Below the pieces are notes generated by a model. It had not been told where the DNA came from. It worked only from the letters and a program-made list of their open reading frames with translations, and did not search any database. From Macrostomum lignano (lineage: Eukaryota): 64,000 nt of DNA. Positions 7,177 to 56,185 of this stretch are shown piece by piece. The stretch spans positions 1-64,000 of the forward strand of contig NIVC01003121.1 in the NCBI GenBank assembly GCA_002269645.1, written 5' to 3'. A program made the position numbers and the translations under genes. The first letter of the stretch is position 1. Each line of letters starts with the position of its first letter.

Positions 7177-7945
7177 ATGATGATGATGGTGATGATCATG
7201 ATGATGATGGTGATGATCATGATGATGATGGTGATGATCATGATGATGATGGTGATGATCATGATGATGATGGTGATGATCATGATGATGATGGTGATGA
7301 TGATCATGATGATGGTGATCATGATGATGATGGTGATGATGATCATGATGATGATGGTGATGATGATCATGATGATGGTGATCATGGTGATGATGGTGAT
7401 GATGATAATGATGATCATGATGATGATGGTGATCATGATGATGATGGTGATGATGATCATGATGATGGTGACCATGATGATGATGGTGATGATGATCATG
7501 ATGATGATGGTGATGATGATCATGATCATGGTGATCATGGTGATGATGATCATGATGATGATGGTGATGATGATCATGATGATGATGGTGATGATGATCA
7601 TGATGATGGTGATCATGATGATGATGGTGATGATGATCATGATGATGGTGATCATGATGATGATGGTGATGATGATCATGATGATGATGGTGATAATGAT
7701 AATGATGATCATGATGATGATGGTGATCATGATGATGATGGTGATGATGATCATGATGATGGTGATCATGATGATGATGGTGATGATGATCATGATGATG
7801 GTGATCATGATGATGATGGTGATGATGATCATGATGATGGTGATCATGATGATGATGGTGATGATGATCATGATGATGATGGTGATGATGATCATGATGA
7901 TGGTGATCATGGTGATGATGATGATGATGATGGTGATCATGATGG

Positions 7946-7978
<33 letters not shown>
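7177..7978. repeat. Compound trinucleotide array (ATG/GTG/ATC)n (mirror 59640-60418)
   Basis: About 800 bp of ATG triplets punctuated by GTG and ATC. Confidence 0.95.
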
Positions 7979-8529: not shown

Positions 8530-9645
8530 TGAAGCACATGTAGCTCCCGAAATTCGGAATCCCACAATCCTGAATTCTTGAATCCTATCCTGCATTTCTG
8601 AATCCAATCCCAAATTTCCGAATTATACAATCCCGAATTTCCGAATCCTATAATACTTAATTTCCGAATCCTACAATTCTGAATTTCGGAATCCACCCCG
8701 AATTTTCGAATTATACAATCCCGAATTTCTGATCCTACAATCCTGAATTTCCGAATCCAATCCTGAATTTCTGAATCCAATCCCGAATTTTCAAATGCAA
8801 TCCTGAATTTTGGAATTCAATTCCGAATTTCCGAATTATACGATCCTTAATTTCCGAATCCTAAATCCGGAATTTCCAAATCCTACAATCCTGCAATCTG
8901 CAGTACTGCAATCATGAATTTCGGAATCCTGCAATCCAGAATTTCTGAATCAGACATGTAAAATTCTGAATTTCCAAATCCCACAATCCTGAATTTCCGA
9001 ATCCTAAAATCCTGAATTTCCGAATCCCACAATCCTGAATTTCCGAATCCCACAATCCTGAATTTCCGAATCCTACAATCCTGAATTTCCGAATCCTACA
9101 ATCCTAAATTTCCGAATCCTACAATCCTGAATTTCCGAATCCCACAATCCTGAATTTCCGAATCCTACAATCCTGAATTTCCGAATCCTACAATCCTGAA
9201 TTTCCGAATCCTACAATCCTGAATTTCCGAATCCTACAATCCTGAATTTCCGAATCCTACAATCCTGAATTTCCGAATCCCACAATCCCGAGTTTCCGAA
9301 TCCTACAATCCCGAGTTTCCGAATCCTACAATCCCGAGTTTCCGAATCCTACAATCCCGAGTTTCCGAATCCTACAATCCTGAATTTCCGAATCCTACAA
9401 TCCTGAATTTCCGAATCCTACAATCCTGAGTTTCCGAATCCTACAATCCTGAGTTTCCGAATCCCACAATCCCGAGTTTCCGAATCCTACAATCCCGAGT
9501 TTCCGAATCCTACAATCCCGAGTTTCCGAATCCTACGAGTACAATCCCGAGTTTCCGAATCCCACAATCCCGAGTTTCCGAATCCCACAATCCCGAGTTT
9601 CCGAATCCTACAATCCTGAATTTCCGAATCTCACAATCCTGAGTC
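8530..9645. repeat. 23-bp minisatellite GAATTTCCGAATCCTACAATCCT (mirror ~58165-59075, shorter)
   Basis: Degenerate 5' part, homogeneous core. Confidence 0.93.
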
Positions 9646-10290
9646 TCCGTATCCCGAATATCTGACTGTGTTTTGGGGGTTTCCGAACACAGAATTCTCA
9701 AATCCGGGCCGAGATTTGATCTAAGCCGTTAATTCCTGCATCCGCCTGCCCTGAGTCGCATTGGCCATGACTTCTCATCATGAATTCTACACATGGCGTC
9801 CAGCTATGTACGAATTAGTCTGCGCATGCGGAACACACCAACCAGCCTTCCAACTGTAATCCTTTGTCTGTTAATATTTAATGCCTGCAATGCTTGCACA
9901 TGCAGCGGGTCGCAGGTCACGTAAGTTTGCAGTCCGCTGTAATTAATAATCTCTCACACCTGTGTCAGGTTTTTCATTTGCTACACGCGCGCCCATGCAA
10001 CAAACGCACCGTGAGCTGGCGTTTCTATAGCAACATTCAGTACAATTGATACAATATATATTTCTGTGTATACACATATTATGGTTAGCACATATATTTT
10101 AACTTAGCTATTCCTTCCATCGATAAATACATGCATTCGCGATTGTGAGAAGCGTCATCTGCAGCGATAATGTCAGAGTTTGTACAGTAATAAGCGGTAT
10201 ATGTACCTGCGCGCCAGCGCTTATTCAACTCGCCGGCCAAATTAATCTTTCATCGCGTTCTCGGCTTGCCGCAGTGTCCATATAGCCAGC

Positions 10291-11004
10291 ATGCAACAGC
10301 AGCATCTGCGGCTGAGCTCTGCTGGGCATGGCAGAAAGCCGAATCATCATCGGAGGCGGCAGCACCACCAACTGCATCGGCTGCTAGAGCTGCCTGAACA
10401 GCAGCAGAGCTCGGCCATAGACAATGGGATCAGTAAACCGTCGGAGGATTTCGGAGCGGCGGGCAGCGTCCTCTGGCAGAACTTTAGCCGGAATTTCCGA
10501 AGCGCTCTGATTGAAACTCGCCTGCGGGCCAAGCGGCAGGAGGCTGCAGAGGCGCCGGAGGCAGCGGGGACGGCAGCGACGGCGGCGACGGCATCGACGG
10601 GTCCGGATGGCACGGAGAGCTGCAGCGTTAAGAAGAGTCCCGGAGTGCAGCAGCAGCAGCTCAGGTATCAGCAGCTTCGAGCCCGCCGACGCTGGCATCT
10701 GCTGCGGCAGAACCTGGGCCGCGTGGTGCAGGCGGCGCAACAGAAAGACGACCTATCTGTCCGGATTGCAAAGCCCCAGCAACAGCAGCAGCTCACCGGC
10801 TGGGAGCTGTTCAGCCGCACCGGACCGAGAATCCGTCAGCAGCTCTACTCGCGCTACAGTTGCGGCCACGGCGGAGTGACCGCCGCCTCCGCCGCGGTTA
10901 TCGCGAACCTGCCGAGCGCTCCCGACCAGCCGATGGCAACTGTCGGCCTTCCAGCGCTGCCAGCAGCGTCGCGTAGTAGGAATCGTCGAGGCAATCAGCA
11001 GTGA
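10291..11004 (+). CDS. Orphan single-exon Q/A/R-rich protein, 237 aa, no recognisable domain
   Basis: ATG-to-TGA ORF with GC-rich coding-like composition; all five indels against the mirror copy are multiples of 3 nt. Confidence 0.6.
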   Translation: MQQQHLRLSSAGHGRKPNHHRRRQHHQLHRLLELPEQQQSSAIDNGISKPSEDFGAAGSVLWQNFSRNFRSALIETRLRAKRQEAAEAPEAAGTAATAATASTGPDGTESCSVKKSPGVQQQQLRYQQLRARRRWHLLRQNLGRVVQAAQQKDDLSVRIAKPQQQQQLTGWELFSRTGPRIRQQLYSRYSCGHGGVTAASAAVIANLPSAPDQPMATVGLPALPAASRSRNRRGNQQ

Positions 11005-11610
11005 ATTTGGAGTAATCACGAGTAACTTCGACTCATGCTCATCAATGCTCATCGACTCGTTCTAAACTCATGAAGTTTTTTTACACCGTACATTGTAATG
11101 CTAAATAAGAACGCGCATTGTTAAAAGCTCTAGAAAATGATAATTGCACTAAAAACTGCCAAGCTGCGCGCCGACAGCTCTGTCTGCCTGTCTGTCTTTC
11201 CCCCCCCTAGTGTCAGAACTGTGGCACAGTTGGCAGGGCTCCCTACTGGCCAAAGTGCTAAGCTACTGCTAGCAATTTCTCACTCGCTCTTGCTCTGCAA
11301 GTGGCACACTGGCGGCAGCTGAGGGCGAACGCATTGTACAAGAGCTGCTGCTGCACTGCTATTCGGCGGGCGGACTGTTAAGGCACTCTGTAGACAATGA
11401 AAATGTCTACTTAGCAACGGGTCTCTCTCCCATCTTTTTCTACACCTTTCTATCACTTACTCTAAGTCTTAGTCCGAGTATTTTTGCCTTAGGAAGCTCA
11501 ACTTCATCGGAACGAGAAACTGTTTCGAGTAGATTAAACTGAAAGCTAGCGGCGAGGCTTTTGAATAAGTCACTGAGAATCAAATCAAGGTCACCGTATA
11601 ACTGGGCAAA

Positions 11611-14458
11611 ATGGACGGAGAAGCAGTGGAAGCTGCTCAAGAAACAGCAGTTGAAGAAGCAGCCGAAGGAACAGCCGAAGAAGCGGGTGAAGCAGCAGAT
11701 AAAGCAGGTAAAGCAGCAGATGAAGCAGCAGATGAAGCAGGTAAAGCAGCAGATGAAGCAGGTAAAGCAGCTGAAGAAACAGGTGAAGCAGCTGAAGAAG
11801 CAGCAGAAGAAGCAGGTAAAGCAGCTGAAGAAGCAGCTGAAGAAACAGGTGAAGCAGCTGAAGAAGCAGGTGAAGCAGCAGAAGAAGCAGCTGAAGAAGC
11901 AGGTGAAGCGGCTGACGAAGCAGCTAAAGAAGCAGGTGAAGCGGCTGAAGAAGCAGGTGAAGCGGCTGAAGAAGCAGCTGAAGAAGCAGGTGAAATAGCC
12001 GAAGAAGCAGCAGATAAAGCAGCTGAAGAAGCAGCTGAAGAAGCAGGTGAAGAAGCAGGTGAAGCAGCCGAAGAAGCAGCTGAAGCAGCTGAAGAAGCAG
12101 CTGAAGAAGCAGCTGAAGCAGCCGAAGAAGCAGCTGAAGAAGCAGCCGAAGAAGTAGCCGAAGAAGCAGCTGAAGAAGCAGCTGAAGAAGCAGCCGAAGA
12201 AGCAGCTGAAGAAGCAGGTGAGAAAGGTGATGGGAACAGGAGGTCAAGCAGGATCATAGCGATAGCAAAACGAGGATTATATATGATTTTATTATAATTT
12301 TATTAAAGGAAATTAGGAAAAGTAAAAACACTAGGGATTAAAAGTGAAGCTCCACATCGCCATCAATTCTCCCCTCACCCCCGCCCGACCGCAGAGCCGC
12401 CCCCGGACTACGAGGTCACCCGGGCGCGCATCGACGAGCTGAACGCCCAGCTGGAGAGCGAGCCGCTGCCGGAGGAGGAGACCCAGCGCAGGCCGACGCG
12501 AATCCGCTTCCAGGAAGGGACGGACAGCTTTGAAGTGCCGGAGCACTACCACGAGGCGCTTTCAGCAGCGGGCGTGTCGGCGGAGGAAGCGAAGAAGTAC
12601 TATCGCACATTCAAGCTATTCGACGCGGATGGATCCAACAGCATCGATGCCGGAGAGCTTTACAGCTGTCTGCAGGTTTCAGGCCAGGTGAGAGTGCAGT
12701 TGGAGCTCACCTATGCTCGTAGCCTAGCGTGTGTGTGTGCTCAGGTTACCGATATTCGTAATTCTCTCCTGTCTGAAGTTGTCCCCGAAAACCTGACCAA
12801 CTAACGCCAAGCAATCCATGACTTCCACCAGGCACCGGAAAGCCAGGAGGAAATCCAGCAGATGCTGTCGGAGAGCGACACGGACGCCAGCGGCAGCATG
12901 GAATTTGTGGAATTCGCCTCGCTGATGTCGCGTCTTTGCAAGCCGGAGGCGGACGTGCGCCAGCAGCTGGTGAGCAGCTTCCAGGTGTTTGACAAAGACC
13001 AGAGCGGCTACTTGGACCGGGAGGAGCTGCGCGACGCCATCTACAGCATGGGGCCGGTGGAGCTTTCCGAGGAGGAGTTCGACGAACTGCTCAGCGCGGT
13101 GGACAAGAACGGAGACGGCCGCATCGACTATGAAGGTGAATTTTAGTGCGCAAGAACACCTTGCTTGCATTGCATTTGTTCGCGAAATAAAAGTTCGAGT
13201 AAGAATATAGGCTGGTCTAGTTTGTGCATTCAATTGATTTCTTTTCAGAGTTTGCCGCGATTCTTTTAACTGACATCAATCAGCTGATTCAGACTACAAA
13301 AGAAGAGATGCAACGGAAAGGGTGAGATTTAAATAGAAATTTATGTTTTGAAAAGTGACCATGGCTTTACTTGTAGTTTAAAGTACGAGTACGCTCTTTT
13401 GCAGGCATCCAGCACACCCGGAACATCCGGAACATCCTGAGCACCCTGAGCATCCTGAGCATCCTGAGCACCCTGAGAATCCTGAGCATCCTGAGCATCC
13501 TGAGCACCCTGAGCATCCTGAGCATCCTGAGCATCCTGAGCATCCAGACCAATCAGACAAAGAGAAAAGTCGCGGGAATGGAAGGAAGGGGGCTGGAGCA
13601 GCTGCAGTTTCAATCTCTAGGTCTGGTGGAGCTGAAGGAGCTGATGCCGCGACTATAGGTGAAGCTCCAGTGGAGGAACCATCAGCTGAAGAAGAACCAC
13701 CCATTGAGGAACCTCCTGCTGAAGAGCCGCCAGCTGAAGAGCCACAAGCTGAAGAGCCGCCAGCTGAAGAACCACAAGCTGAAGAACCACCAGCTGAAGA
13801 ACCACCAGCTGAAGAACCACCAGCTGAAGAACCACAAGCTGAAGAACCACCAGCTGAAGAACCACCAGCTGAAGAACCACCAGCTGAAGAACCACCAGCT
13901 GAAGAACCACCAGCTGAAGAACCACCAGCTGAAGAACCACCAGCTGAAAAACCACCAGCTGAAGAACCACCAGCTGAAGAACCACCAGCTGAAGAAGAAC
14001 CACCAGCTGACGAAGAACCACCAGCTGAAGAACCACCAGCTGAAAAAGATCCACATCTTGAGGAAAAACCAGTTGAAGCACCGCAAAGTCAGGAACCACA
14101 TGTTGTACCCGCTGGGCAACCAGGTGTTTTTGTTTCTGTACAGCCAGGTGCTGTGCAAGTTGAACAGCCAGTGGTGGTACCAGCAAATCAGCAATCGGAT
14201 GAGAAATCGCATGCCTCAGGTGGCATCCAACTTCAATTCAATGCTGGGGATGATTCACAGAAGCAGAATCAAGTACAGGCCGATGTGAAACAGAAGGACG
14301 CTCATGGTCAGCATCAAGTTAAAATTAAAAGACAGTCTGCCAAGTCTCGAGATGACCGATCTAGGCAGTCATCCGGTCATAGCTTCAAATCAGGCTCTCG
14401 GAAGTCGGCATCAAAGCCAAATTCAAAATCAGGTGGCGGTTCCAGTGACTCAGACTAA
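11611..14458 (+). CDS. Calmodulin-like 4-EF-hand protein with acidic repeat arms, chimeric left version; predicted exons 11611-12217, 12395-12687, 12832-13135, 13249-13321, 13405-14458 (~776 aa)
   Basis: EF loops DADGSNSIDAGE, DTDASGSMEFVE, DKDQSGYLDREE and DKNGDGRIDYEE; all proposed introns are GT-AG with phases that add up to 2331 nt (777 codons); N-terminal EEAA/GKAADEA repeats, then HPE and EEPPA repeats. Confidence 0.72.
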
Positions 14459-15960: not shown

Positions 15961-18661
15961 ATGCCGCAGACCGGGGAGTCCGACGACTTCGGCATGCGAG
16001 ACGATCAGCGCGCCGCCATGGCGGAGCTCGAGCGGCTGCAGAGCACCAGACCGGAGGACTGGAACGGTGAGTAGCGCTTCCTTGGCTGCGTGCGACTTAC
16101 ATTTGAATTTTTAAAGATTTTCATCGCATTTTGAGCACCGCCGCCCCGCACCCCGCAATTCCGCATTGCAGAGGAAAAGGACGCCGAGTTCTTGCAGCTG
16201 CTCATGGGTGAGTCTGCGAGTTGATCCGGTCTCGAGCAGAGGTCAAGCAGGATCATAGCGGTAGCAAAACTAGAATTAGAAATGATTTTCAGCTTCAGCT
16301 TTGAGGGGTTGGCCCTCATGGGCACGAGATGCAAGACAAACCCGTTGCATTACTGCTGTGAGCTACTCAGCTCCTTGATGTACTCGTGGAAGCTTTTTTC
16401 AAGTATTTTGAGAACGTTAAACAGAGAGGCACGGCAGTTTCCATATCCTCTCAGTGTAATTCCAAAAAAAGTCAGGGGCGTCGCCACAGGGGACAGGGGG
16501 AGATGTCCCCCAAGTGAAAGCAATGGTTTGTCCCCTCCGCCCCACCTTGTGACCCCGTTATGGAAATCAACAATTTTGCTTCAGGGCGCCGCAATAAGGG
16601 TCTGCGGCGCCGAAATGAGTGTCTGCGGCGCCAAAATGAGTGTCTGCGGCGCCGAAATGAGTGTCTGCGGCGCCGAAATGAGTATCTGCGGCGCCGAAAT
16701 GAGTGTCTGCGGCGCCGAAATGAGTGTCTGCGGCGCCAAAATGAGTGTCTGCGGCGCCAAAAAAATGTAGGATTTTATTTCATGGTAGAATTCTTGGCTT
16801 TGCCCCCTCACCATAAAATCCATGGTGACGGCCGAGGCAATTTTCAGGGAATTTAAACCGAAAACGTTAGAAGCTAATCATTAAAGGTGAAGCTGCACAT
16901 CGCAAACGATTCTCCTCCAACCCGCCCGGCCGCAGAGCCGCCCCCGGACTACGAGGTCACCCGGGCGCGCATCGACGAGCTGAACGCCCAGCTGGAGAGC
17001 GAGCCGCTGCCGGAGGAGGAGGCCAAGCGCAGGCCGACGCGAATCCGCTTCAGCGAGAATCTCGTCAGCGTGGCGCCCGAGCCCGAGCCGCCGGCTGGTG
17101 AGCTGCATGAGGACACGAGCGACGAGGCGGAGGACGAGGAGGAGGACAGTGAAGAGGAACAGCAGCAGCAGCAGCAAGAAAGCGGCGATGCGGACGGGCT
17201 GGGCGAAATGCCGCAACCGGCCGCCAACCAAGACGATGTTGATGAAGCACCACCTTCCAGATTGCCTCCCGCCACCACTGCTGAGCAGCAACAACAGCAG
17301 CCGCAGCAAGAGAAAGAAGCATCACAGAAGGTTGTCGTTGTAAACGGCGGTCGGATTCGGTTTGTCGACAGCTCCGACTTCGAGGCGAAGAACTCGCCGT
17401 CGCCCAGGCCGGCAAGTCGGCGCCCGAAATCAGCCGCCGCCTCCGAGTCCCGCCGGCAACCGCAGGCGCAGCAGCAGCCGCAGTCCCAGCGCCGGAAGAA
17501 CCGGCAGCAGGCGGCCGCTCGGCCGACCAGCGCCCCGCAGGCCTCCTTCAGCAGGCAGCAGCAGGAGGAGGAGCAGCAGAGGCTCGAGCTGCAGCAGCCG
17601 CAGCAGCAGCACAGCCGCGAGGAGAACGAGGCCGCCTTCCAGGCCTGGCTGGCCAAGAAGCGTCGGGAACGCGGTGGCAGCGGGCGAAAGTCGTCCGCCT
17701 CAACATCTGGCGGCGGCGGCGGCTCGAAGGCGGAGGACAGCGAGGCCGCCTTCCAGGCCTGGCTGATCCGCAAGCGGCAGCAGTCGGAGGCGGAGCAGCG
17801 CCGGGCGGAGGCGGCGCGCCGCGCCGAGACTGATCGGCGCCGGGACGCAGCGGCCGAGCGCGACGGCGTCAGCTTCGAGCGCTGGCTGGAGGCGAAGCGG
17901 GCGCAGCTCCGCCGCGAGGCCGACCTGCAGCAGCGGCGGCGGACGGAAGAAGACCCGCCGCCTGAGGCGATCCACTCGCCGGAGGAGTGTCGCAAGGCAT
18001 TCAGGAGGTGAGTCGCGGGCCTGGAGCAAGGGAGGTCCTGGAGCCCCCGTTCTGCTGACCCCTGGAGGGCTGACACGTCTCGGCGAGTCGCCAGCAGCTG
18101 CGTAATCCCTACCTGAGATTACCCACCTGAGGCTACCCACTTGAGGTTTCCCACCTGAGATTACCCACCTGAGGCTACCCACTTGAGGTTTCCCACCTGA
18201 GATTACCCACCTGAGGCTACCCACTTGAGGTTACCCACCTGAGATTACCCACCTGAAGTTACGCACCTGAGGTTAACCACCTGAGATTACCCACCTGAGG
18301 TTACCCACCTGAGGTTACCCACCTGAGGTTACCCACCTGAGATTACCCACCTGAAGTTACCCATCTGTAATTAGCCACCTCAAGGTAACCTGAGGTCAGT
18401 TACTCTGGTTAGTTCACAGAGTTAAAAGCGCTGGTGGCACAGTCCAGAGTTCGAATCCTAGTCCATCCCGAACCCCCCCCCCACCCCGCCAGCTGGCTCA
18501 AGAGGAAGGAAGAGCAGCGGCGCCAGGAGGAGAAGCTGGAGCGCCAGAGGGCGCGCATCACTCGCCTGGCGCTGCGCCGCTCACGCAAGTCGCAGGCCCT
18601 GGCCAGCGCGTTGCTGGCCGCAAACTCCTACAGGTACATGGACTACTATGGTTATCGATAG
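15961..18661 (+). CDS. Coiled-coil protein, tentatively CCDC181-like; exons 15961-16066, 16172-16207, 16936-18007, 18493-18661 (~460 aa)
   Basis: GTGAGT donors and CAG acceptors give 1383 nt in frame; repeated AFQAWLxxK / FERWLEAK / AFRSWLKRK helices and a C-terminal YMDYYGY. The family name is from recalled motif resemblance only. Confidence 0.7.
16473..16833. mobile_element. Possible MITE-like insert with internal 21-bp array CGGCGCCGAAATGAGTGTCTG in intron 2 of the CCDC181-like gene (mirror ~50700-51303, expanded array)
   Basis: Starts CAGGGGCGTCGCCA; imperfect inverted counterpart TGGTGACGGCC at ~16823-16833 (9/11 match); no clear TSD. Confidence 0.35.
18110..18395. repeat. 14-bp intronic minisatellite ACCCACCTGAG(G/A)TT (mirror ~49225-49405)
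   Basis: Tandem units in the last intron of the CCDC181-like gene. Confidence 0.9.
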
Positions 18662-19059
18662 ATAGTTTTTCATGATAACAACTGGACTGGCGACTTGGGT
18701 TTGAGCTGCGACTCAGGCTGTAAAGCTGTCCGATTGCAAACTGCCAGCTCATCCTGCAACTCTTGCAGATTTGTTTGCTCCTAGAAGATTTCTGATTTTA
18801 TTTCTATTTTTCTTTTTGACTATATAATTTTGGCAATCAGTGCTTAGCCCATCATATTTTCCTTCTTTGTAGGCTCTTTTACCTGTGATTTATAAATGCT
18901 ACTCAGATTTATTGTTTGTTTCACGGATTCTAAACTCGCATATCAGCACTTGTCTCTGTGGCTCTGTGCACTTTTATATGACCCACGCACTGCCTTTTGT
19001 GAGCTGCCTGTCCTCTGCTTGCGATCCTCTTCTCGATCTCCAATTCTGTCACTGCCCTG

Positions 19060-20580
19060 TCACTCTCTCCGCCTTCTACCTCTTCGCTCACTGTCACACT
19101 CTCTCCGCTCTTTGTCACTCTCTATCCGCTCTCTGTCACACGCTCTCCGCTCTCTGCCCCACTCCCTCCGCTCTCTGCCCCACTCTCTCCGCTCTCTGCC
19201 CCACTCTCTCTCCGCTCTCTGCCCCACTCCCTCCGCTCTCTGCCCCACTCCCTCCGCTCTCTGCCCCACTCCCTCCGCTCACTGTCACACTCTCTCCGCT
19301 CTTTGTCACTCTCTCTCCGCTCTCTGCCCCACTCTCTCTCCGCTCTTTGCCCCACTCCCTCCGCTCTCTGCCCCACTCCCTCCGCTCTCTGCCCCACTCC
19401 CTCCGCTCTCTGCCCCACTCCCTCCGCTCTCTGCCCCACTCCCTCCGCTCTCTGCCCCACTCCCTCCGCTCTCTGCCCCACTCCCTCCGCTCTCTGTCAC
19501 TCTCTCTCCGCTCTCTGCCCCACTCCCTCCGCTCTCTGCCCCACTCCCTCCGCTCTCTGCCCCACTCCCTCCGCTCTCTGTCACTCTCTCTCTCCGCTCT
19601 CTGCCCCACTCTCCGCTCTCTGTCACTCTCTCTCCGCTCTCTGTCACTCTCTCCGCTCTCTGTCACTCTCTCCGCTATCTGTCACTCTCTCTCCGCTCTC
19701 TGTCACTCCCTCTCTCCGCTCTCTGTCACTCTCTCCGCCTTCTACCTCTTCGCTCACTGTCACACTCTCTCCGCTCTTTGTCACTCTCTATCCGCTCTCT
19801 GCCCCACTCCCTCCGCTCTCTGCCCCACTCTCTCTCCGCTCTCTGCCCCACTCTCTCTCCGCTCTCTGCCCCACTCCCTCCGCTCTCTGCCCCACTCCCT
19901 CCGCTCTCTGCCCCACTCCCTCCGCTCTCTGCCCCACTCCCTCCGCTCTCTGCCCCACTCCCTCCGCTCTCTGCCCCACTCCCTCCGCTCTCTGCCCCAC
20001 TCCCTCCGCTCTCTGTCACTCTCTCTCCGCTCTCTGCCCCACTCCCTCCGCTCTCTGCCCCACTTCCTCCGCTCTCTGCCCCACTCCCTCCGCTCTCTGC
20101 CCCACTCCCTCCGCTCTCTGTCACTCTCTCTCCGCTCTCTGTCACTCTCTCTCTCCGCTCTCTGCCCCACTCTCCGCTCTCTGTCACTCTCTCTCCGCTC
20201 TCTGTCACTCTCTCCGCTATCTGTCACTCTCTCTCTCTCCGCTCTCTGTCACTCCCTCTCTCCGCTCTCTGTCACTCTCTCCGCTCTCTGTCACTCTCTC
20301 TCTCTCCGCTCTTTGTCACTCTCTCTCCGCCCTCTGTCACACTCTCTCCACCCTCTGCCCCACTCTCTCCGCCTTCTGTCACACTCTCTCCACCCTCTGC
20401 CCCACTCTCTCCGCCTTCTGTCACACTCTCTCCACCCTTTGCCCCACTCTCTCCGCCTTCTGTCACACTCTCTCCGCCCTCTGCCCCGCTCTCTCAGCCC
20501 TCTGTCACACTCCCACCACCCTCTGTCACTCTCTCTCCGCTCTCTGCCGCACTCTTTGCCACACTCTCCCCGCCCGCTCT
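19060..20580. repeat. CT-rich ~21-bp minisatellite CTCCGCTCTCTGCCCCACTCC with GTCAC variants (mirror ~47020-48540)
   Basis: About 1.5 kb of tandem units with higher-order blocks that differ between arms. Confidence 0.95.
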
Positions 20581-21149
20581 TTTTTAACAAGCAAGCATTT
20601 ATGGTATTAAAATTCAGACCAAGTGACCCGTTCAGCTTCAGTTTAGCTGGTTTGTTTCCCTCCTAACTTTGCAGCTCGTTTTTCTTCTGTTGGCAACAGG
20701 TCGCAATTTCTGTCTCTGTCAGACCTCTCTCTAGTTAGCAGGGCTCTAGCGGACTGTGCAATTAATTAAGCTGGTACATGCTTACAGTTCGGCTTTGTGT
20801 CTGATTTGCCCCTGGTCCTTTTCTGCCTTGCGCGCACCTTACTTTGCCTCCGGCTTATCTGTTCCTATGTTATATATTTATTATTTTTATATAATATACA
20901 TATTTTTATCCGATAACTCAGCGGTGTAAACGTGCAACAGATATGAACCCTCTTGTGTTTATTGCATATTTTGCCTGCGTATGAATAAACTCTAATTTGT
21001 ACACACTTTGAAAACACTGCGCAGCAAACTGCAATTACAAGACTGACAGCTCGGCTTCTCAACACTTCATTGCATCAAATTTCTCCATCTGAACGCCACC
21101 GATGACCATCTGGAAAGCAAATTCCAACCACTTATGGCAACTAGATGAA

Positions 21150-33592: not shown

Positions 33593-33634
33593 NNNNNNNN
33601 NNNNNNNNNNNNNNNNNNNNNNNNNNNNNNNNNN
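33593..33634. other. Assembly gap (42 N) at the symmetry centre
   Basis: Ns in the sequence; the right contig begins at the complement of the poly-C run at ~33240-33248. Confidence 0.99.
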
Positions 33635-48941: not shown

Positions 48942-51816
48942 CTATCGATAACCATAGTAGTCCATGTACCTGTAGGAGTTTGCGGCCAGCAACGCGCTGG
49001 CCAGGGCCTGCGACTTGCGTGAGCGGCGCAGCGCCAGGCGAGTGATGCGCGCCCTCTGGCGTTCCAGCTTCTCCTCCTGGCGGCGCTGCTCTTCCTTCCT
49101 CTTGAGCCAGCTGGCGGGGTGGGGGGGGTTCGGGATGGACTAGGATTCGAACTCTGGACTGTGCCACCAGCGCTTTTAACTCTGTGAACTAACCAGAGTA
49201 ACTGACCTCAGGTTACCTTGAGGTGGCTAATTACAGATGGGTAACCTCAGATGGGTAATCTCAGGTGGGTAACCTCAGGTGGGTAACCTTAGGTGGGTAA
49301 CCTCAGGTGCGTAACCTCAGTTGGGTAATCTCAGGTGGGTAATCTCAGGTGGGTAATCTCAGGTGGGTAATCTCAGGTGGGTAACCTCAGGTGGGTAACC
49401 TCAGGTAGGGAGCAACACAGCTGCTGGCGACTCGCCAAAACGTGTCAGCCCTCCAGGGGTCAGCAGAACGGGGGCTCCAGGACCTCCCTTGCTCCAGGCC
49501 CGCGACTCACCTCCTGAATGCCTTGCGACACTCCTCCGGCGAGTGGATCGCCTCAGGCGGCGGGTCTTCTTCCGACCGCCGCCGCCGCTGCTGCAGGTCG
49601 GCCTCGCGGCGGAGCTGCGCCCGCTTCGCCTCCAGCCAGCGCTCGAAGCTGACGCCGTCGCGCTCGGCCGCTGCGTCCCGGCGCCGATCAGTCTCGGCGC
49701 GGCGCGCCGCCTCCGCCCGGCGCTGCTCCGCCTCCGACTGCTGCTGCTTGCGGATCAGCCAGGCCTGGAAGGCGGCCTCGTTGTCCTCCGCCTTCGAGCC
49801 GCCGCCGCCAGATGCTGAGGCGGACGACTTTCGCCCGCTGCCGCCGCGTTCCCGACGCTTCTTGGCCAGCCAGGCATGGAAGGCGGCCTCGTTCTCCTCG
49901 CGGCTGTGCTGCTGCTGCGGCTGCTGCAGCTCGAGCCTCTGCTGCTCCTCCTGCTGCTGCTGCCTGCTGAAGGAGGCCTGCGGGGCGCTGGTCGGCCGAG
50001 CGGCCGCCTGCTGCCGGTTCTTCCGGCGCTGGGACTGCGGTTGCTGCTGCGCCTGCGGTTGCCGGCGGAACTCGGAGACGGCGGCTGATTTCGGGCGCCG
50101 ACTTGCCGGTCTGGGCGACGGCGAGTCCTTCGCCTCGAAGTCGGAGCTGTCGACGAACCGAATCCGACCGCCGTTTACAACGACAACCTTCTGTGATGCT
50201 TCTTTCTCTTGCTGCGGCTGCTGCTGTTGTTGCTGCTCAGCAGTGGTGGTGGGAGGCAATCTGGAAGGTGGTGCTTCATCAACATCGTCTTGATTGGCGG
50301 CCGGTTGCGGCATTTCGCCCAGCCCGTCCGCATCGCCGCTTTCTTGCTGCTGCTGCTGCTGCTGCTGCTGTTCCTCTTCACTGTCCTCCTCCTCGTCCTC
50401 CTCCTCCTCGCTCGTGTCCCCGTGCAGCTCACCAGCCGGCGGCTCGGGCTCGGGCGCCACGCTGACGAGGTTCTCGCTGAAGCGGATTCGTGTCGGCCTG
50501 CGCTGGGCCTCCTCCTCCGGCAGCGGCTCGCTCTCCAGCTGGGCGTTCAGCTCGTCTATGCGCGCCCGGGTGACCTCGTAGTCCGGGGGCGGCTCTGCGG
50601 CCGGGCGGGGTGGAGGAGAATCGTTTGCGATGTGCAGCTTCACCTTTAATGATTAACTTTTAACGTTTTCGGTTTAATTCACCATAAATTGGATTTTATG
50701 ATGAGGGGGCAGAGCCAAGAATTCTGCCATGACTAGATTCCTAGATTTTTTTGGCGCCGCAGCCAGGCACACATTTTGGCGCCGCAGCCAGGCACACATT
50801 TTGGCGCCGCAGACACTCATTTCGGCGCCGTATACACTCATTTTGGCGCCGCAGCCAGACACACATTTTGGCGCCGCAGGCACTCATTTTGGCGCCGCAG
50901 CCAGGCACTCATTTCGGCGCCGCAGACACTCATTTTGGCGCCGCAGCCAGACACACATTTTGGCGCCGCAGACACTCATTTCGGCGCCGCAGCCAGGCAC
51001 ACATTTTGGCGCCGCAGCCAGACACACATTTTGGCGCCGCAGACACTCATTTCGGCGCCGCAGACACTCATTTCGGCGCCGCAGACACTCATTTTGGCGT
51101 CGCAGCCAGGCACTCATTTTGGCGCCGCAGTCAGGCCACTCATTTCGGCGCCGCAGACACTCATTGCGGCGCCCTGAAGCAAAATTGTTGATTTCCATAA
51201 CGGGGTCACAAGGTGGGGCGCGGGAGACAAACCATTGGCATGTCCCCCCCCATAGCTTTCACTTCGGGGACATCTCCCCCTGTCCCCCGTGGCGACGCCC
51301 CTGACTATTTCTTGGAATTACACTGAGAGGATATGGAAACTGCCGTGCCTCTCTGTTTAACGTTCTCAAAATACTTGAAAAAGCTTCCACGAGTGCATCA
51401 AGGAGCTGAGTAGCTCACAGCAGTAATGCAACGGGTTTGTCTTGCATCTCGGGCCCATGAGGGCCAACCCCTCAGAGCTGAAGCTAAAAATCATATCTAA
51501 TTCTAGTTTTGCCACCGCTATGATCCTGCTTGACCTCTGCTCGAGACCGGATCGACTCGCAGACTCACCCATGAGCAGCTGCAAGAACTCCGCGTCCTTT
51601 TCCTCTGCAATGCGGAATTGCGGGGTGCGGGGCGGCGGGTGCTCAAAATGCGATGAAAATCTTAACAAATTCAAATGTAAGTCGCACGCAGCCAAGGAAG
51701 CGCTACTCACCGTTCCAATCCTCCGGCCTGGTGCTCTGCAGCCGCTCGAGCTCCGCCATGGCGGCGCGCTGATCGTCTCGCATGCCGAAGTCGTCGGACT
51801 CTCCGGTCTGCGGCAT
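48942..51816 (-). CDS. Mirror copy of the CCDC181-like gene; exons 51711-51816, 51569-51604, 49511-50594, 48942-49110 (~464 aa)
   Basis: Same splice sites, 1395 nt in frame; differs by substitutions and in-frame Q/G/R tract indels. Confidence 0.7.
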
Positions 51817-53335: not shown

Positions 53336-56185
53336 TTAGTCTGAGTCACTGGAACCGGAACCGCCATCTGATTTTGAATTTGGCTTTGATGCCGACTTCC
53401 GAGAGCCTGATTTGAAGCTACGACCAGATGACTTCCTAGATCCGTCATCTCGAGACTTGGCAGACTGTCTTTTAATTTTAACTTGATGCTGACCATGAGC
53501 GTCCTTCTGTTTCACATCGGCCTGTACTTGATTTCGCTTCTGTGAATCATCCCCAGCATTGAATTGAAGTTGGATGCCACCTGAGGCATGCGATTTCTCA
53601 TCCGATTGCTGATTTGCTGGTACCACCACTGGCTGTTCAACTTGCACAGCACCTGGCTGTACAGAAACAAGAACACCTGCTGGTTGCCCAGCGGGTACTA
53701 CATGTGGTTCCTGACTTTGCGGTGCTTCAACTGGTTTTTCCTCAAGATGTGGATCTTTTTCAGCTGGTGATGGTTCTTCAGCTGGTGGTTCTTTTTCAGC
53801 TGGTGATGGTTCTTCAGCTGGTGGTTCTTCGGCTGGTGGTTCTTCAGCTGGTGGTTCTTCGGCTGGTGGTTCTTCGGCTGGTGGTTCTTCGGCTGGTGGT
53901 TCTTCAGCTGGTGGTTCTTCGGCTGGTGGTTCTTCAGGTGGTGATGGTTCTTCAGCTGGTGGTTCTTCGTCTGGTGGTTCTTCAGGTTGTGATGGTTCTT
54001 CAGCTGGTTCTTCAGCTGGTGGTTCTTCAGCTGGTGATGGTTCTTCAGCTGGTGGTTCTTCGGCTGGTGGTTCTTCAGCTGGTGATGGTTCTTCAGCTGG
54101 TGGTTCTTCGGCTGGTGTCTCTTTAGCTGGTGGTTCTTCAGTGGCTGGCTCTTCGGCTGGTGGTTCTTCAGCTGGTGATGGTTCTTCAGATGGTGGTTCT
54201 TCAGCTGGTGGCTCTTCAGTGGGTGGCTCTTCAGCAGCAGGTTCCTCAATGGGTGGTTCTTCTTCAGCTGATGGTTCCTCCACTGAAGCTTCACCTATAG
54301 TCGCGGCATCAGCTCCTTCAGCTCCACCAGACCTAGAGATTGTAACTGCAGCTGCTCCAGTCCCCTTCCATCCATTCCCGCGACTTTTCTCTTTGTCTGG
54401 TTGGTCTGGATGCTCAGGGTGCTCAGGATGTTCCGGGTGTGCTGGATGCCTGCAAAAGAGCGTACTCGTACTTTAAACTACAAGAAAACCCATGGTCACT
54501 TTAAAAAAAATAAATTTCTATTTAATCTCACCCTTTCCGTCGCATCTCTTCTTTCGTAGTCTGAATCAGCTGATTGATGTCAGTTAAAAGAATCGCGGCA
54601 AACTCTGAAGAGAAATCAATTGAATGCACAAACTAGACCAGTCTATATTCTTACTCGAACTTTTATTTCGCGTACAAATGCAATGCAAGCAAGGTGTTCT
54701 TGCGCGCTAAAATTCACCTTCATAGTCGATACGGCCGTCTCCGTTTTTGTCCACAGCGCTGAGCAGTTCGTCGAACTCCTCCTCGGAAAGCTCCACGGAC
54801 CCCATGCTGTAGATGGCGTCGCGCAGCTCCTCCCGGTCCAAGTAGCCGCTCTGGTCTTTGTCAAACACCTGGAAGCTGCTCACCAGCTGCTGGCGCACGT
54901 CCGCCTCCGGCTTGCAAAGACGCGACATCAGCGAGGCGAATTCTACAAAGTCCATGCTGCCGCTGGCGTCCGTGTCGCTCTCCGACAGCATCTGCTGGAT
55001 TTCCTCCTGGCTTTCCGGTGCCTGGTGGAAGTCATGGATTGTTGACGTTAGTTGGTCGGGTTTTCGGGGACAACTTCAGACAGAAGAGAGAGAATTACTA
55101 ATATCCGTAACCTGAGCACACACGCACACGCTAGGCTAAGAAGATTAGGTAAGCTCCAACTGCACTCTCACCTGGCCTGAAACCTGCAGACAGCTGTAAA
55201 GCTCTCCGGCATCGATGCTGTTGGATCCATCCGCGTCGAATAGCTTGAATGTGCGATAGTACTTCTTCGCTTCCTCCGCCGACACGCCCGCTGCTGAAAG
55301 AGCCTCGTGGTAGTGCTCCGGCACCTCAAATCTGTCCGTCCCTTCCTGGTGGCGGCCGGAGCCTGCTCTGCTGCCGCTTGCCTTGCTGCCGTCCCTGCCA
55401 CCTTCTCTGTAACCCTTTTTTCGATTGGCGCTTCCCTTCCGACTGTCTCCGTCACCGAATTTTTCTCTTGCGCTGCCTTTCCTGCTGCCTCCTCTGCCTT
55501 GTCCGTCACCGTTTTGCTCTCTTGCGCTGACTTTCCTGCTGCCTCCTCTGCCTTGTCCGTCACCGTTTTGCTCTCTTGCGCTGACTTTCCTGATGCCTTT
55601 CTTCCCGTCACCTTTCTCACCTGCTTCTTCAGCTGCTACTTCGGCTGCTTCACCTGCTTCTTCGGCTGCTTCTTCAGCTGCCTCACCTGCTTCTTCGGCT
55701 GCTTCCTCGATTGCTTCTTCGGCTGCTTCACCTGCTTCTTCAGCTGCTTCTTCGGCTGCTTCACCTGCTTCTTCAGCTGCTTCTTCGGCTGCTTCTTCGG
55801 CTGCTTCTTCGGCTGCTTCACCTGCTTCTTCAGCTGCTTCTTCGGCTGCTTCACCTGCTTCTTCAGCTGCTTCTTCGGCTGCTTCTTCGGCTGCTTCACC
55901 TGCTTCTTCAGCTGCTTCTTCGGCTGCTTCACCTGCTTCTTCAGCTGCTTCTTCGGCTGCTTCACCTGCTTCTTCACCTGCTTCTTCAGCTGCTTCTTCG
56001 GCTGCTTCTTCGGCTGCTTCACCTGCTTCTTCAGCTGCTTCTTCGGCTGCTTCACCTGCTTCTTCGGCTGCTTCACCTGCTTCTTCAGCTGCTTCTTCGG
56101 CTGCTTCTTCGGCTGCTTCTTCGACTGCTTTTTCAACTGCTTCGTAAGCTGTTTCTTGAGCAGCTTCCACAGCTTCTCCGTCCAT
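53336..56185 (-). CDS. Calmodulin-like 4-EF-hand protein with acidic repeat arms, non-chimeric version; exons 55172-56185, 54718-55021, 54532-54604, 53336-54449 (~834 aa)
   Basis: Continuous ORF from ATG 56185 through EEAAEEAG repeats and a K/R/G/S linker into EF1; exon lengths total 2505 nt (835 codons); four canonical EF loops. Confidence 0.82.

What the first reader, a model, noticed from the sequence alone, without database searches (positions are those of the whole stretch)
12218..12510. Exon capture from the neighbouring gene predicts a new intron and an in-frame chimeric EF-hand protein
Seen: in the left copy, 12237-12509 replaces ~252 bp of native exon (55350-55601 in the right copy). 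The replacement is homologous to intron 2 / exon 3 of the CCDC181-like gene ~4 kb downstream (~16240-16290 and ~16850-17050). It carries an intact acceptor (CCGACCGCAG|AG at 12394) and 115 nt of exon (2 mismatches to the left donor gene) fused in frame to the EF-hand region (RPTRIRF-QEGTDSF). Just upstream, CAG|GTGAGA at 12217/12218 is a consensus donor in the matching phase 1. Splicing 12218-12394 (177 bp) restores a full ORF of 777 codons in which ~39 aa (EPPPDYEVTRARIDELNAQLE...) replace the basic K/R/G linker. The captured intronic part is far more diverged (~84%) than the exonic part (~98%). Inference: intron gain plus exon shuffling caught in one copy only; the conservation reflects selection or a diverged donor copy.
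Basis: partly seen in the sequence, partly recalled or inferred. Interest (0 to 1): 0.85.

Follow-up and report, generated by a model that had tools for sequence, protein, structure and literature searches.

The report
Chimeric EF-hand gene with new intron
In one of two copies of a flatworm calcium-binding gene, part of a coding exon has been replaced by a piece of intron plus exon copied from a CCDC181-like gene next door, which very probably created a new intron and a hybrid protein; this is a rare but not unprecedented snapshot of how introns and mosaic proteins arise.

Summary
The window is Macrostomum lignano. It holds two ~30-kb copies of one region, head to head, separated by a 42-N scaffold gap. 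In the left copy of an EF-hand gene, 252 bp of exon 1 (a K/R/G-rich linker, intact in the right copy) are replaced by 273 bp. These match two pieces of intron 2 and the first 115-116 nt of exon 3 of the adjacent CCDC181-like gene (E 7e-58). Read through, the gene stops at 12295-12297. Spliced 12217^12395, it gives an in-frame 776-aa chimera. Donor (CAG|GTGAGA) and acceptor (CAG) fit the species' motifs. A UniProt M. lignano gene model, apparently from another assembly (A0A1I8FI97), threads onto the left copy and crosses exactly this junction. The EF-hand domain shows pN/pS 0.12 between copies. The chimera and its intron are therefore probably real, but I could examine no RNA data, and that gene model is frameshifted. 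Two things are unexplained: the captured intron part is 18% diverged against 0.9% for the exon part, and the insert is no closer to the left donor than to the right. The captured 39 aa are the most conserved CCDC181 motif and end in an RVxF-like RIRF. This is a good, not unprecedented, case of exon shuffling with intron gain.

The parts
11611..12217 (+). Exon 1 of the left EF-hand gene. It runs from the ATG through the acidic E/A/G repeat and ends at CAG|GT.
   Evidence: An in-frame TAA lies 12 nt upstream of the ATG. Translation. The region contains 14 CAG|GTRA donor-like sites, all phase 1.
12218..12394 (+). Proposed new intron: 177 nt, phase 1, 41% GC, GTGAGA...CCGCAG.
   Evidence: Removal restores the frame. 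The donor fits the M. lignano motif GT[G/A]AG and the acceptor fits CAG (PMC8629364). It is identical to this gene's own next donor, CAG|GTGAGA at 12687/12688. The junction is used by gene model P0002.
12218..12236 (+). Former coding sequence (GTGAGAAAGGTGATGGGAA = G-E-K-G-D-G) that now forms the 5' end of the intron. This part is 'intronized'.
   Evidence: The same 19 nt are read through as codons in the right copy...AEEAGEKGDGKKG....
12237..12290 (+). Captured piece A. It is homologous to donor intron 2 starting 29 nt after that intron's 5' splice site.
   Evidence: 12240-12290 matches 16239-16289 and 51537-51487 at 90.2%, E 7e-12.
12291..12302 (+). AT-rich filler. It stands where the donor copies carry about 550 bp, including a 21-bp minisatellite.
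12295..12297 (+). First in-frame stop (TAA) if the segment is retained.
12303..12394 (+). Captured piece B. It is homologous to the 3' end of donor intron 2: polypyrimidine tract, CTCAC at -21, and the CAG acceptor.
   Evidence: There are 20 insert-specific differences in 89 aligned columns.
12395..12510 (+). Captured exon part. It encodes (E)PPPDYEVTRARIDELNAQLESEPLPEEETQRRPTRIRF, 39 aa. The last base is shared with native sequence.
   Evidence: There is 1 insert-specific difference in 114 columns. It is read in the donor's native frame. It covers 5 of the 6 invariant columns of the CCDC181 alignment, including [RK][VI]xF.
12511..12687 (+). Native continuation of the exon (QEGTDSFEVPEHY... 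and the first EF-hand).
   Evidence: Colinear with the right copy from 55349 downwards. Pfam EF-hand hits.
12832..14458 (+). Remaining exons of the left gene: 12832-13135, 13249-13321 and 13405-14458, with the stop at 14456-14458.
   Evidence: The exon junctions match models P0001 and P0002.
15961..18662 (+). Left CCDC181-like gene, the candidate donor. Exons: 15961-16066, 16172-16207, 16936-18007, 18493-18662.
   Evidence: M. lignano CCDC181 models P0023-P0026. The LLM|EPPPDY junction is as in P0023.
16208..17051 (+). Donor intron 2 (16208-16935) and the first 116 nt of exon 3 in the left copy.
50479..51537 (-). The same donor segment in the right copy.
53336..56185 (-). Right EF-hand gene: 834 aa in 4 exons, with no intron in the linker.
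   Evidence: P0001 is identical to its C-terminal part.
55350..55601 (-). Native K/R/G-rich linker (252 bp, with an internal 54-bp tandem repeat). It is missing from the left copy.
33593..33634 (.). Run of 42 N, a scaffold gap, exactly between the two inverted copies.

Best explanation
The window is Macrostomum lignano. One of two diverged copies of an EF-hand (calmodulin/troponin-C-like) gene suffered a non-homologous replacement inside its long first exon.

What changed. 252 bp encoding a K/R/G-rich linker were lost. They were replaced by a 273-bp patchwork copied at the DNA level from a CCDC181-like gene, whose nearest copy lies 4.4 kb downstream on the same strand. The patchwork has four parts:
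- about 54 nt from near the 5' end of that gene's intron 2;
- 12 nt of filler;
- the last 92 nt of intron 2, with its polypyrimidine tract and CAG acceptor;
- the first 115-116 nt of exon 3.

Likely mechanism. The patchwork, the 1-2-nt junction microhomologies and the accompanying deletion point to repair of a break by end joining with copied filler DNA, or to replicative template switching.

Consequence. The imported acceptor pairs with a latent 5' splice site that was already present as codons (GCA G|GT GAG A) at the end of the acidic repeat. Together they define a 177-nt phase-1 intron. Splicing removes all in-frame stops and yields a 776-aa protein. In it, 39 aa of the most conserved CCDC181 N-terminal motif, ending in the RVxF-like RIRF, replace the basic linker immediately upstream of an intact EF-hand domain.

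Shown:
- the genomic structure and the homologies;
- frame restoration;
- the fit of the splice signals to the species' motifs;
- a separate gene model that uses the junction;
- purifying selection on the EF-hand domain between the copies.

Inferred: that the intron is actually spliced in vivo; the repair mechanism; the direction of the event (linker ancestral); the functional meaning of the captured motif.
For: Structure and homology.

Frame restoration and the 777-codon ORF.

The right copy reads the same GTGAGA as codons within an uninterrupted 834-aa ORF.

Splice signals.
- The donor GTGAGA matches the M. lignano cis-donor motif GT[G/A]AG, and the acceptor matches CAG (PMC8629364).
- The donor 9-mer is identical to the gene's next donor.
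- The acceptor region has 29/40 pyrimidines and a YTNAY (CTCAC) at -21.

Separate gene model. UniProt A0A1I8FI97 (P0002) reads PKKQLKKQ|SRPG..ESEPLPEEETQRRPTRIRFQEGT.. and threads onto the left copy in shifting frames.
- It carries left-specific residues (TALK, RRF, GPVELS, ETQ).
- It uses 12217^12395 and the next two introns.
- Its single-base frameshifts indicate that its source sequence differs from this window.

The right-type model A0A1I8HPY9 also exists.

Selection. The EF-hand segment has pS 0.074 and pN 0.009 between left and right. The 4 nonsynonymous differences compare with about 15 expected if one copy had drifted neutrally for the whole left-right divergence (P = 0.001).

The donor gene is intact in both arms, so the event was a copy and not a move.

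The captured segment is read in its native frame and covers the conserved CCDC181 motif.
Against: - I could examine no transcript data.
- P0002 is 5'-partial and frameshifted at five or more places. I could not establish how it was made (Wasik et al. 2015 is not held). The same proteome contains mis-fused models (P0027).
- No NCBI-annotated or transcript-derived protein in the 5.8-billion-cluster database carries the junction, other than P0002.
- The selection argument needs the event to be old. If it is recent, an intact downstream ORF says little.
- Frame restoration alone has a chance probability of roughly 0.2-0.3.
- The captured intron part is unexpectedly diverged, and the donor's CTAAT at about -60 is lost, so splicing efficiency is uncertain.
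- The ancestral state was not verified in an outgroup. The native linker has no hit in the protein database.
Confidence: 0.6

Rival explanations
1. The rearrangement is real, but the left copy is a damaged paralogue. The segment is not spliced, or only inefficiently. Transcripts then end at the TAA at 12295-12297, giving a 228-aa acidic protein or nonsense-mediated decay. On this view the in-frame 'intron' is a coincidence that a gene predictor exploited.
For: - No RNA evidence is available.
- P0002 could be an ab initio model on an error-rich assembly.
- Chance of frame restoration is about 0.2-0.3, because every GGT-based donor of the repeat is phase 1 and two of the three frames of the captured exon are open.
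- M. lignano has redundant paralogues (PMC10733133; PMC10468722), so loss of one copy is tolerable.
- The donor's CTAAT branch-like motif is lost in the insert.
Against: - The splice signals are consensus-grade and identical to sites this gene already uses.
- The downstream 560 codons are intact, and pN/pS is 0.12.
- The acceptor region has become more pyrimidine-rich, not degraded.
- In a cis context, a strong acceptor with 14 upstream donor-like sites is expected to be spliced.
Confidence: 0.22
2. This rival concerns origin only and is compatible with the best explanation. The template was not the adjacent gene copy but another, unseen copy of the CCDC181-like gene with a short, diverged intron 2. 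Alternatively, the capture is older than the left/right split, and the GC-rich exon part was later homogenised by gene conversion from the gene 4.4 kb away.
For: - Insert-specific differences are 25/140 in the intron part against 1/114 in the exon part (Fisher p = 3e-6).
- Neutral left-right divergence is only 6.5%. The binomial p for the intron excess is 4e-12.
- The insert shares variable sites equally with the left and right donors.
- The insert lacks the roughly 550-bp block present in both donors.
- M. lignano has up to three paralogous copies of most regions (PMC10733133).
Against: - A paralogue diverged by 18% at neutral sites should also show about 5 synonymous differences in the 38 captured codons. 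None is insert-specific.
- The other CCDC181 paralogues found (P0024-P0026) are only 37-44% identical and cannot be the source.
- Published paralogue identity at small scale is about 98%.
- Physical proximity to a copy of the very gene that was captured is hard to credit as coincidence.
Confidence: 0.3
3. Assembly artefact: the chimeric segment is a consensus or mis-join error of a long-read assembly of a highly repetitive neopolyploid genome.
For: - The region lies at the edge of a 576-bp coding tandem repeat.
- The scaffold contains at least one doubtful join.
- Published assemblies of this genome have many errors. REAPR scored 64% and 32% of bases as error-free (PMC5730564).
Against: - The same chimeric junction (RIRF|QEGT, with the insert-specific Thr) occurs in a protein model whose underlying sequence differs from the window by several indels. 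That points to a different assembly.
- The insert is not identical to either donor copy in the window, as a mis-join would be.
- The junctions are clean, and the result is in frame with consensus splice sites.
- The assemblies do share part of their PacBio data, so independence is incomplete.
Confidence: 0.06
4. The imported acceptor is used for spliced-leader trans-splicing. This would split the locus into an upstream acidic-repeat cistron and a downstream EF-hand cistron.
For: [quoted passage not shown]
Against: - The acceptor CCGCAG does not fit the trans-acceptor motif [T/C]TNCAG.
- Good cis donors lie upstream.
- The SL ends in ATG. Joined to AGCCGCCCC..., it opens a frame that stops after 15 codons (frame 0).
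- P0002 shows a cis junction.
Confidence: 0.04

Closest known systems
[quoted passage not shown]
   Same: Foreign DNA is inserted at a break inside an exon and ends up being spliced out. The junctions are non-homologous with 1-2 nt of microhomology, and the gain is imprecise, accompanied by a deletion.
   Different: The source of the filler is identifiable and is itself part of an intron with a working 3' splice site, plus 39 codons of exon that stay in the mRNA. The 5' splice site is not imported. No flanking direct repeats were seen.
Intronization of exonic sequence / activation of latent splice sites (Irimia et al. 2008, as reviewed in PMC3443670)
   Same: A donor-like codon run (GCA G|GT GAG A), read as codons in the sister copy, becomes the 5' splice site. 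Nineteen nt of former coding sequence become intronic.
   Different: No point mutation creates the sites. Most of the intron and the whole 3' splice site are imported.
Intron transfer / intron transposition
   Same: Sequence of a pre-existing spliceosomal intron is re-used in a new position.
   Different: Donor and recipient are unrelated genes, not paralogues. Only part of the intron (without its 5' splice site) was copied, together with exon. The copy is at the DNA level, with no sign of reverse splicing.
Exon shuffling that creates chimeric genes after duplication (for example jingwei and Sdic in Drosophila; named from my own knowledge, not checked here)
   Same: After gene duplication, one copy acquires an exon fragment of another gene in frame while the sister copy keeps the old structure.
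   Different: The captured piece is short (39 aa, a linear motif rather than a domain) and was copied from an adjacent gene as genomic DNA. The same event supplies the acceptor of a new intron.
Templated insertions of polymerase-theta end joining / microhomology-mediated break-induced replication (from my own knowledge)
   Same: A patchwork of nearby sequence in the same orientation, template jumps, tiny microhomologies, and a deletion at the target.
   Different: A length of 273 bp is large for theta-mediated inserts. The mechanism cannot be tested from one sequence. Error-prone synthesis would not spare the exon part.

Membership tests
U2-type GT-AG spliceosomal intron (segment 12218-12394) | 5' splice site matching the species' consensus | tested here: met
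   CAG|GTGAGA fits the M. lignano motif GT[G/A]AG (PMC8629364). It is identical to the donor at 12687/12688 of the same gene.
U2-type GT-AG spliceosomal intron (segment 12218-12394) | 3' splice site with a polypyrimidine tract and a branch-point-like motif | tested here: inconclusive
   The CAG acceptor, 29/40 pyrimidines and CTCAC at -21 are present. No branch-point model for this species is available, and the donor gene's CTAAT at about -60 is lost.
U2-type GT-AG spliceosomal intron (segment 12218-12394) | Removal from mature mRNA | not testable with these tools
   The only evidence is indirect. Gene model A0A1I8FI97 uses the junction. No RNA-seq data are accessible, and the junction 31-mer is absent from metagenome contigs.
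U2-type GT-AG spliceosomal intron (segment 12218-12394) | Absence of the intron at the homologous position in a sister or ancestral gene (that is, a gain) | tested here: inconclusive
   The right copy has an uninterrupted exon there. No outgroup orthologue could be retrieved, so polarity rests on parsimony: the neighbour-derived intron sequence marks the left copy as derived.
Chimeric gene by exon shuffling | Captured segment homologous to an exon of an identifiable, unrelated donor gene | tested here: met
   Identity is 98.3% over 115 nt to exon 3 of the CCDC181-like gene. The donor family is confirmed by P0023-P0031.
Chimeric gene by exon shuffling | Reading frame kept across both junctions, in the donor's native frame | tested here: met
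   Both the donor intron and the new intron are phase 1.
Chimeric gene by exon shuffling | Chimeric product expressed | not testable with these tools
   Neither transcript nor proteome data are available.
Intron transfer between paralogues by recombination | Donor and recipient are paralogues and the intron lands at the homologous position | tested here: not met
   An EF-hand gene and a CCDC181-like gene are unrelated. The similarity of the native linker to the donor intron is not above shuffles (42 of 500 reach it).
Intron gain by DSB repair with filler DNA | Insertion with non-homologous or microhomologous junctions, often with short flanking direct repeats | tested here: inconclusive
   There are 1-2 nt of microhomology at both junctions, no flanking direct repeat, and a 252-bp deletion at the target.
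EF-hand calcium-binding protein (recipient gene) | EF-hand domain pairs above Pfam thresholds | tested here: met
   PF13499 at E 4.9e-30 and PF00036 at E 1.1e-25, tested on the right-copy protein. The domain is unbroken in the left copy.
CCDC181 (donor gene) | Full-length similarity to proteins named CCDC181, including the C-terminal SY.Y.DYYGYR end and F..WL..K repeats | tested here: met
   Hits named CCDC181 in M. lignano and Haliotis, with Saccoglossus kowalevskii weak at E 5e-4. Alignment A1. Pfam gives only a sub-threshold CCDC34 hit.
RVxF-type PP1 docking motif (captured RIRF) | Pattern [RK]-x(0,1)-[VI]-{P}-[FW], conserved among homologues | tested here: met
   RIRF/RVRF in the M. lignano copies, KVGF in Haliotis and Saccoglossus, and KVNF in Apostichopus. 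The F is invariant in alignment A1. The pattern definition is from my own knowledge.
RVxF-type PP1 docking motif (captured RIRF) | Binding to PP1 | not testable with these tools
   CCDC181 is mentioned as a possible PP1gamma2 partner in PMC9737803. The primary paper is not held.

The most novel reading that the evidence does not exclude
A single repair event in one paralogue of a neopolyploid flatworm did two things at once. It made a new, efficiently spliced intron, combining an imported 3' splice site with a latent exonic 5' splice site. It also grafted the conserved PP1-docking (RVxF-type) motif of CCDC181 onto a calcium sensor, giving a selected neofunctional protein that links Ca2+ sensing to PP1 recruitment. 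The roughly 5-fold excess divergence confined to the new intron would then record rapid adaptive tuning of its splicing signals. The unchanged sister copy in the same genome would serve as a built-in control.
Probability: 0.2. Interest if true: 0.7.

Novelty: new variant of a known kind. Interest (0 to 1): 0.55.

Why it matters
How new spliceosomal introns arise is still largely unsolved. A 2012 review counted only 5 unambiguous cases of gain by break repair and 3 of intron transfer (PMC3443670).

- Here the source of the new intron's 3' half is identifiable.
- The 5' splice site can be seen functioning as plain codons in the sister copy.
- The same event shuffled a conserved short linear motif into another protein.

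If RNA data confirm splicing, the locus shows that coding repeats full of GGT-GAR codons are latent donor arrays. Such arrays would need only an imported acceptor to become introns.

It would also provide a matched pair, ancestral-like and derived, in a flatworm that can be made transgenic. That would allow minigene and functional tests. If splicing is not confirmed, the locus is simply a paralogue being lost after polyploidy.

Tried and rejected
1. Ancestral state from homologues. A protein search with the native right-copy linker gave no hit, so no outgroup is available.

2. Fetching more M. lignano DNA.
- Exact look-ups of P0002, P0023 and two window ORFs found nothing.
- The spliced chimera was not accepted as a query.
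- The loci of the distant paralogue P0025 (L001-L003, Mlig_3_7 contigs) carry no EF-hand neighbour and have no similarity to the window.

3. Transcript-like evidence. The junction 31-mer and the chimeric junction 29-mer are absent from metagenome contigs.

4. How A0A1I8FI97 was predicted. Wasik et al. 2015 is not held, and other papers do not say.

5. Homology-driven recombination. The similarity between the native linker and the donor intron or exon is not above shuffles. Rejected.

6. The roughly 550-bp block missing from the insert, as a transposon inserted later into the donors. There are no terminal inverted repeats. The 8-bp repeat ATTTTCAG flanks the block only in the left donor, and the insert keeps both ATTTT copies. 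Not supported.

7. The upstream ORF 10291-11004 as a first exon of the EF-hand gene. An in-frame TAA at 11599-11601 lies just before the ATG at 11611, with no acceptor in between. It is treated as a separate gene.

8. SL trans-splicing at the new acceptor. Disfavoured.

9. Protein-level purifying selection as the reason for the exon/intron divergence contrast. Rejected, because synonymous sites are equally unchanged.

10. tRNA and Rfam scans of the window: nothing found.
Full report
- The C-terminal half of the right-hand EF-hand gene is identical to UniProt A0A1I8HPY9 (P0001).
- The neighbouring gene matches M. lignano proteins named coiled-coil domain-containing protein 181.

A self-comparison shows that about 3.4-33.2 kb (plus strand) and 33.6-64 kb (minus strand) are two copies of the same region. 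They are 87-99% identical. Exactly between them lies the only N run of the window, 42 N at 33593-33634, and the right copy starts immediately after it.

The 'palindrome' is therefore two separately assembled contigs joined by a scaffolder. The copies may be paralogues of this neopolyploid genome, which has up to three copies of most regions (PMC10733133; excess paralogues in PMC10468722). They need not be a local inverted duplication.

The copies are real, diverged sequences and not noise.
- Indels inside coding sequence are multiples of three, while those in flanking DNA are not.
- Non-coding divergence is 6.5% (58/899).

**The observation.** The two copies are colinear through the EF-hand gene except for one stretch.

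In the right copy, exon 1 is an uninterrupted ORF. It runs ...AEEAGEKGDG-KKGIRKVSAREQNGDG...GSGRH-QEGTDRFEVPEHY....

In the left copy the 252 bp after GEKGDG (right-copy coordinates 55601-55350) are missing, and 273 bp (12237-12509) stand in their place. BLAST of this stretch against the window gives three matches (alignments):
- 12303-12510 against 16843-17051, 86% over 212, E 7e-58;
- 12303-12510 against 50668-50479, 89% over 193, E 2e-57;
- 12240-12290 against 16239-16289 and 51537-51487, 90% over 51, E 7e-12.

I built the neighbouring gene's model: exons 15961-16066, 16172-16207, 16936-18007 and 18493-18662. Its LLM|EPPPDY junction agrees with the M. lignano model P0023. The two matched pieces lie in its intron 2, starting 29 nt after the 5' splice site and then at the last 92 nt. 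The rest is the first 115-116 nt of its exon 3.

**Consequence for the gene.** Read through, the left gene ends at TAA 12295-12297 after ...GEKGDGNRRSSRIIAIAKRGLYMILL.

Removing 12218-12394 (177 nt, 41% GC) joins GCA G|AG CCG and gives a 776-aa protein. In it, EPPPDYEVTRARIDELNAQLESEPLPEEETQRRPTRIRF (39 aa, in the donor's own frame) replaces the basic linker. It sits 30 residues upstream of the first EF-hand.

The 5' splice site is not imported. GTGAGAAAGGTGATGGGAA is native sequence that the right copy translates as G-E-K-G-D-G.

The splice signals look sound.
- CAG|GTGAGA fits the published M. lignano cis-donor motif GT[G/A]AG (122,399 of 187,627 sites).
- The acceptor fits CAG (PMC8629364).
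- The donor 9-mer is identical to the next donor of the same gene.

The acidic repeat contains 14 CAG|GTRA sites. All are in phase 1, because they are GCA-GGT-GAR codons. Phase compatibility with the phase-1 acceptor was therefore almost guaranteed. I estimate the chance probability of frame restoration at 0.2-0.3, so it is only weak evidence on its own.

**Independent support.** The search with the chimeric peptide returned UniProt A0A1I8FI97 (P0002), a 209-aa M. lignano 'EF-hand domain-containing protein'. Threaded onto the window, it follows the left copy through three reading frames:
- PKKQLKKQ, the +1 frame of the 24 nt that precede 12217;
- then SRP-GLRGHPGAHRRAERPA-ESEPLPEEETQRRPTRIRFQEGT-TALKCRSTTTRRF..., jumping 12217 to 12395, 12688 to 12833 and 13135 to 13249.

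It carries left-copy-specific states: ETQ, TALK/RRF, GPVELS. The frame changes are single-base indels relative to the window. The model therefore comes from a different, more error-prone sequence, probably the ML2 assembly; that attribution is from my own knowledge.

This shows two things. The chimeric junction is not peculiar to this assembly, and a gene model with exactly the proposed intron exists.

There are caveats.
- I could not find out whether that model rests on transcripts.
- The two published assemblies share part of their PacBio data.
- Models from the same source can be wrong. P0027 fuses the CCDC181 C-terminus to a WD-repeat gene.

**Selection.** Over the 193 codons from QEGTD to RKG, the copies differ by 9 synonymous and 4 nonsynonymous changes (pS 0.074, pN 0.009). 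If one copy had been free of constraint for the whole left-right divergence, about 15 nonsynonymous changes would be expected on that branch alone (P = 0.001). This argues that the left copy stayed functional, and hence spliced, provided that the capture is not very recent.

**Origin and an unexplained pattern.** A three-way comparison of the insert with both donor copies shows a sharp step at the splice site.
- There are 25 insert-specific differences in 140 intronic columns, against 1 in 114 exonic columns (Fisher p = 3e-6).
- The two donors differ from each other at 9/140 intronic and 3/114 exonic columns.

The intronic excess is far above the neutral left-right level (p = 4e-12 against the per-branch rate).

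Protein-level selection does not explain the contrast. No synonymous site of the captured exon changed, and the two differences from the left donor are both nonsynonymous.

At sites where the donors differ, the insert agrees about equally often with either, so it cannot be assigned to the adjacent copy.

Other findings bear on the origin.
- The roughly 550-bp middle of the donor intron, including a 21-bp minisatellite, is absent from the insert and replaced by a few AT-rich bases.
- Junction microhomology is 1-2 nt, and the native linker has no significant similarity to the donor. Homologous recombination is therefore excluded.

I consider three options open:
- rapid remodelling of the new intron, whose pyrimidine tract is stronger (29/40 against 25-26/40) and which has gained a CTCAC at -21;
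- an older capture followed by gene conversion of the GC-rich exon part from the gene 4.4 kb away;
- an unseen donor copy.

The other CCDC181 paralogues in the database are only 37-44% identical and are excluded as donors.

**Mechanism proposed.** I propose a break, or a stalled fork, in the tandemly repeated linker of exon 1, which has a 54-bp repeat. It was repaired by end joining or template switching that copied a patchwork from the nearby CCDC181-like gene in the same orientation.

The copy happened to include a 3' splice site. Combined with a latent donor at the end of the GGT-GAR-rich acidic repeat, this converted the inserted intron fragment and 19 nt of former exon into an intron. It left 39 foreign codons in frame. 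Only the end state is observed; the repair pathway is inference.

**What the captured peptide is.** I aligned M. lignano, mollusc, echinoderm and hemichordate CCDC181 proteins. The captured segment is the best conserved N-terminal block and contains five of the six invariant columns. It ends precisely at the invariant Phe of an [RK][VI]xF motif: RIRF, RVRF, KVGF, KVNF.

That pattern matches the RVxF docking motif of protein phosphatase 1 (definition from my own knowledge). CCDC181 is cited as a possible PP1gamma2 partner (PMC9737803). The chimera may thus have gained a PP1-docking motif next to a calcium sensor. This is a hypothesis only.

**Comparison with known mechanisms.** Of the seven mechanisms of intron gain listed in PMC3443670, this case combines two.
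- The other is 'intronization', because a latent exonic donor is used and former codons become intron.

It is not 'intron transfer', which requires recombination between paralogues; that feature was tested and not met. It is at the same time a small-scale exon-shuffling event.

Each component is known. The combination, with an identifiable source and an unaltered sister copy, is unusual. I therefore rate it a new variant of a known kind, with moderate interest.

**Verdict.**

| Claim | Probability |
|---|---|
| The genomic structure is real | about 0.9 |
| The intron is spliced and the chimeric protein is made | about 0.6 |
| The event copied the immediately adjacent gene copy | about 0.5 |
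| The captured motif confers a new function | about 0.2 |

Junction-level RNA evidence and outgroup orthologues are the decisive missing data.

Noticed in passing
window 33593-33634, and arms 3400-33244 / 33635-64000: The roughly 30-kb 'palindrome' is two contigs joined head to head across a 42-N scaffold gap. The right arm begins at the first base after the gap. Arm identity varies from 99% (27.3-33.2 kb and 4.5-9.5 kb) to about 87-93% in between. The inverted adjacency may be a scaffolding artefact between paralogous contigs.
   Followed up: partly
window 10291-11004 (+) and its right-arm counterpart at about 57500-56800 (-): A 237-aa ORF about 600 bp upstream of the EF-hand gene. It has no Pfam hit. 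The five indels between the two copies inside it are all multiples of three (3, 21, 9, 3, 18 bp), whereas most indels in the flanking DNA are not. It is probably a separate small gene, possibly co-transcribed with the EF-hand gene in this operon-rich, trans-splicing species.
   Followed up: partly
window 11646-12221 (+); 55608-56177 (-): The acidic E/A/G coding repeat contains 14 consensus donor-like CAG|GTRA sites, all in phase 1. The right copy reads all of them as codons. This is a latent array of 5' splice sites inside an exon.
   Followed up: yes
window 12395-12510; 16936-17051; alignment A1: The conserved N-terminal CCDC181 block ends in an [RK][VI]xF motif (RIRF/RVRF/KVGF/KVNF across four phyla). 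This fits the PP1 RVxF docking pattern.
   Followed up: partly
window 16285-16847 (left donor intron 2): The roughly 550-bp block absent from the insert is bounded by ATTTTCAG at both ends in the left donor only. It holds a 21-bp minisatellite (16585-16762, 8.5 copies). No terminal inverted repeats were found.
   Followed up: partly
window 18440-18470 and 18111-18367 (intron 3 of the CCDC181-like gene): A tRNA-like B-box sequence (AGTTCGAATCCTAG) lies next to a 14-bp minisatellite (18 copies). ARAGORN and Rfam find nothing. It may be a SINE remnant.
   Followed up: partly
window, whole: The density of minisatellites with 11-69-bp units is extreme. Examples: 674-1722, 2303-3125, 3366-3928, 5511-5918, 7177-7978, 8545-9654, 19080-20555, 21153-23690 (two arrays of the same 16-bp unit in opposite orientation) and 24649-25160. 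Several generate long spurious ORFs, for example 18885-20666.
   Followed up: no
protein P0027 (UniProt A0A1I8JPK1) against window 17500-18662: An M. lignano database model fuses a frameshifted C-terminus of this CCDC181-like gene to a downstream WD-repeat protein. Gene models from that source can be unreliable, which limits the weight of P0002.
   Followed up: no
window 13424-13545 against 54411-54439, and 13691-14077 against the right copy: The coding HPE(9-bp) and PAEEP(15-bp) repeats of the EF-hand gene differ strongly in copy number between the two copies: about 14 against 4 HPE units, and proteins of 776 against 834 aa overall. The frame is kept.
   Followed up: partly
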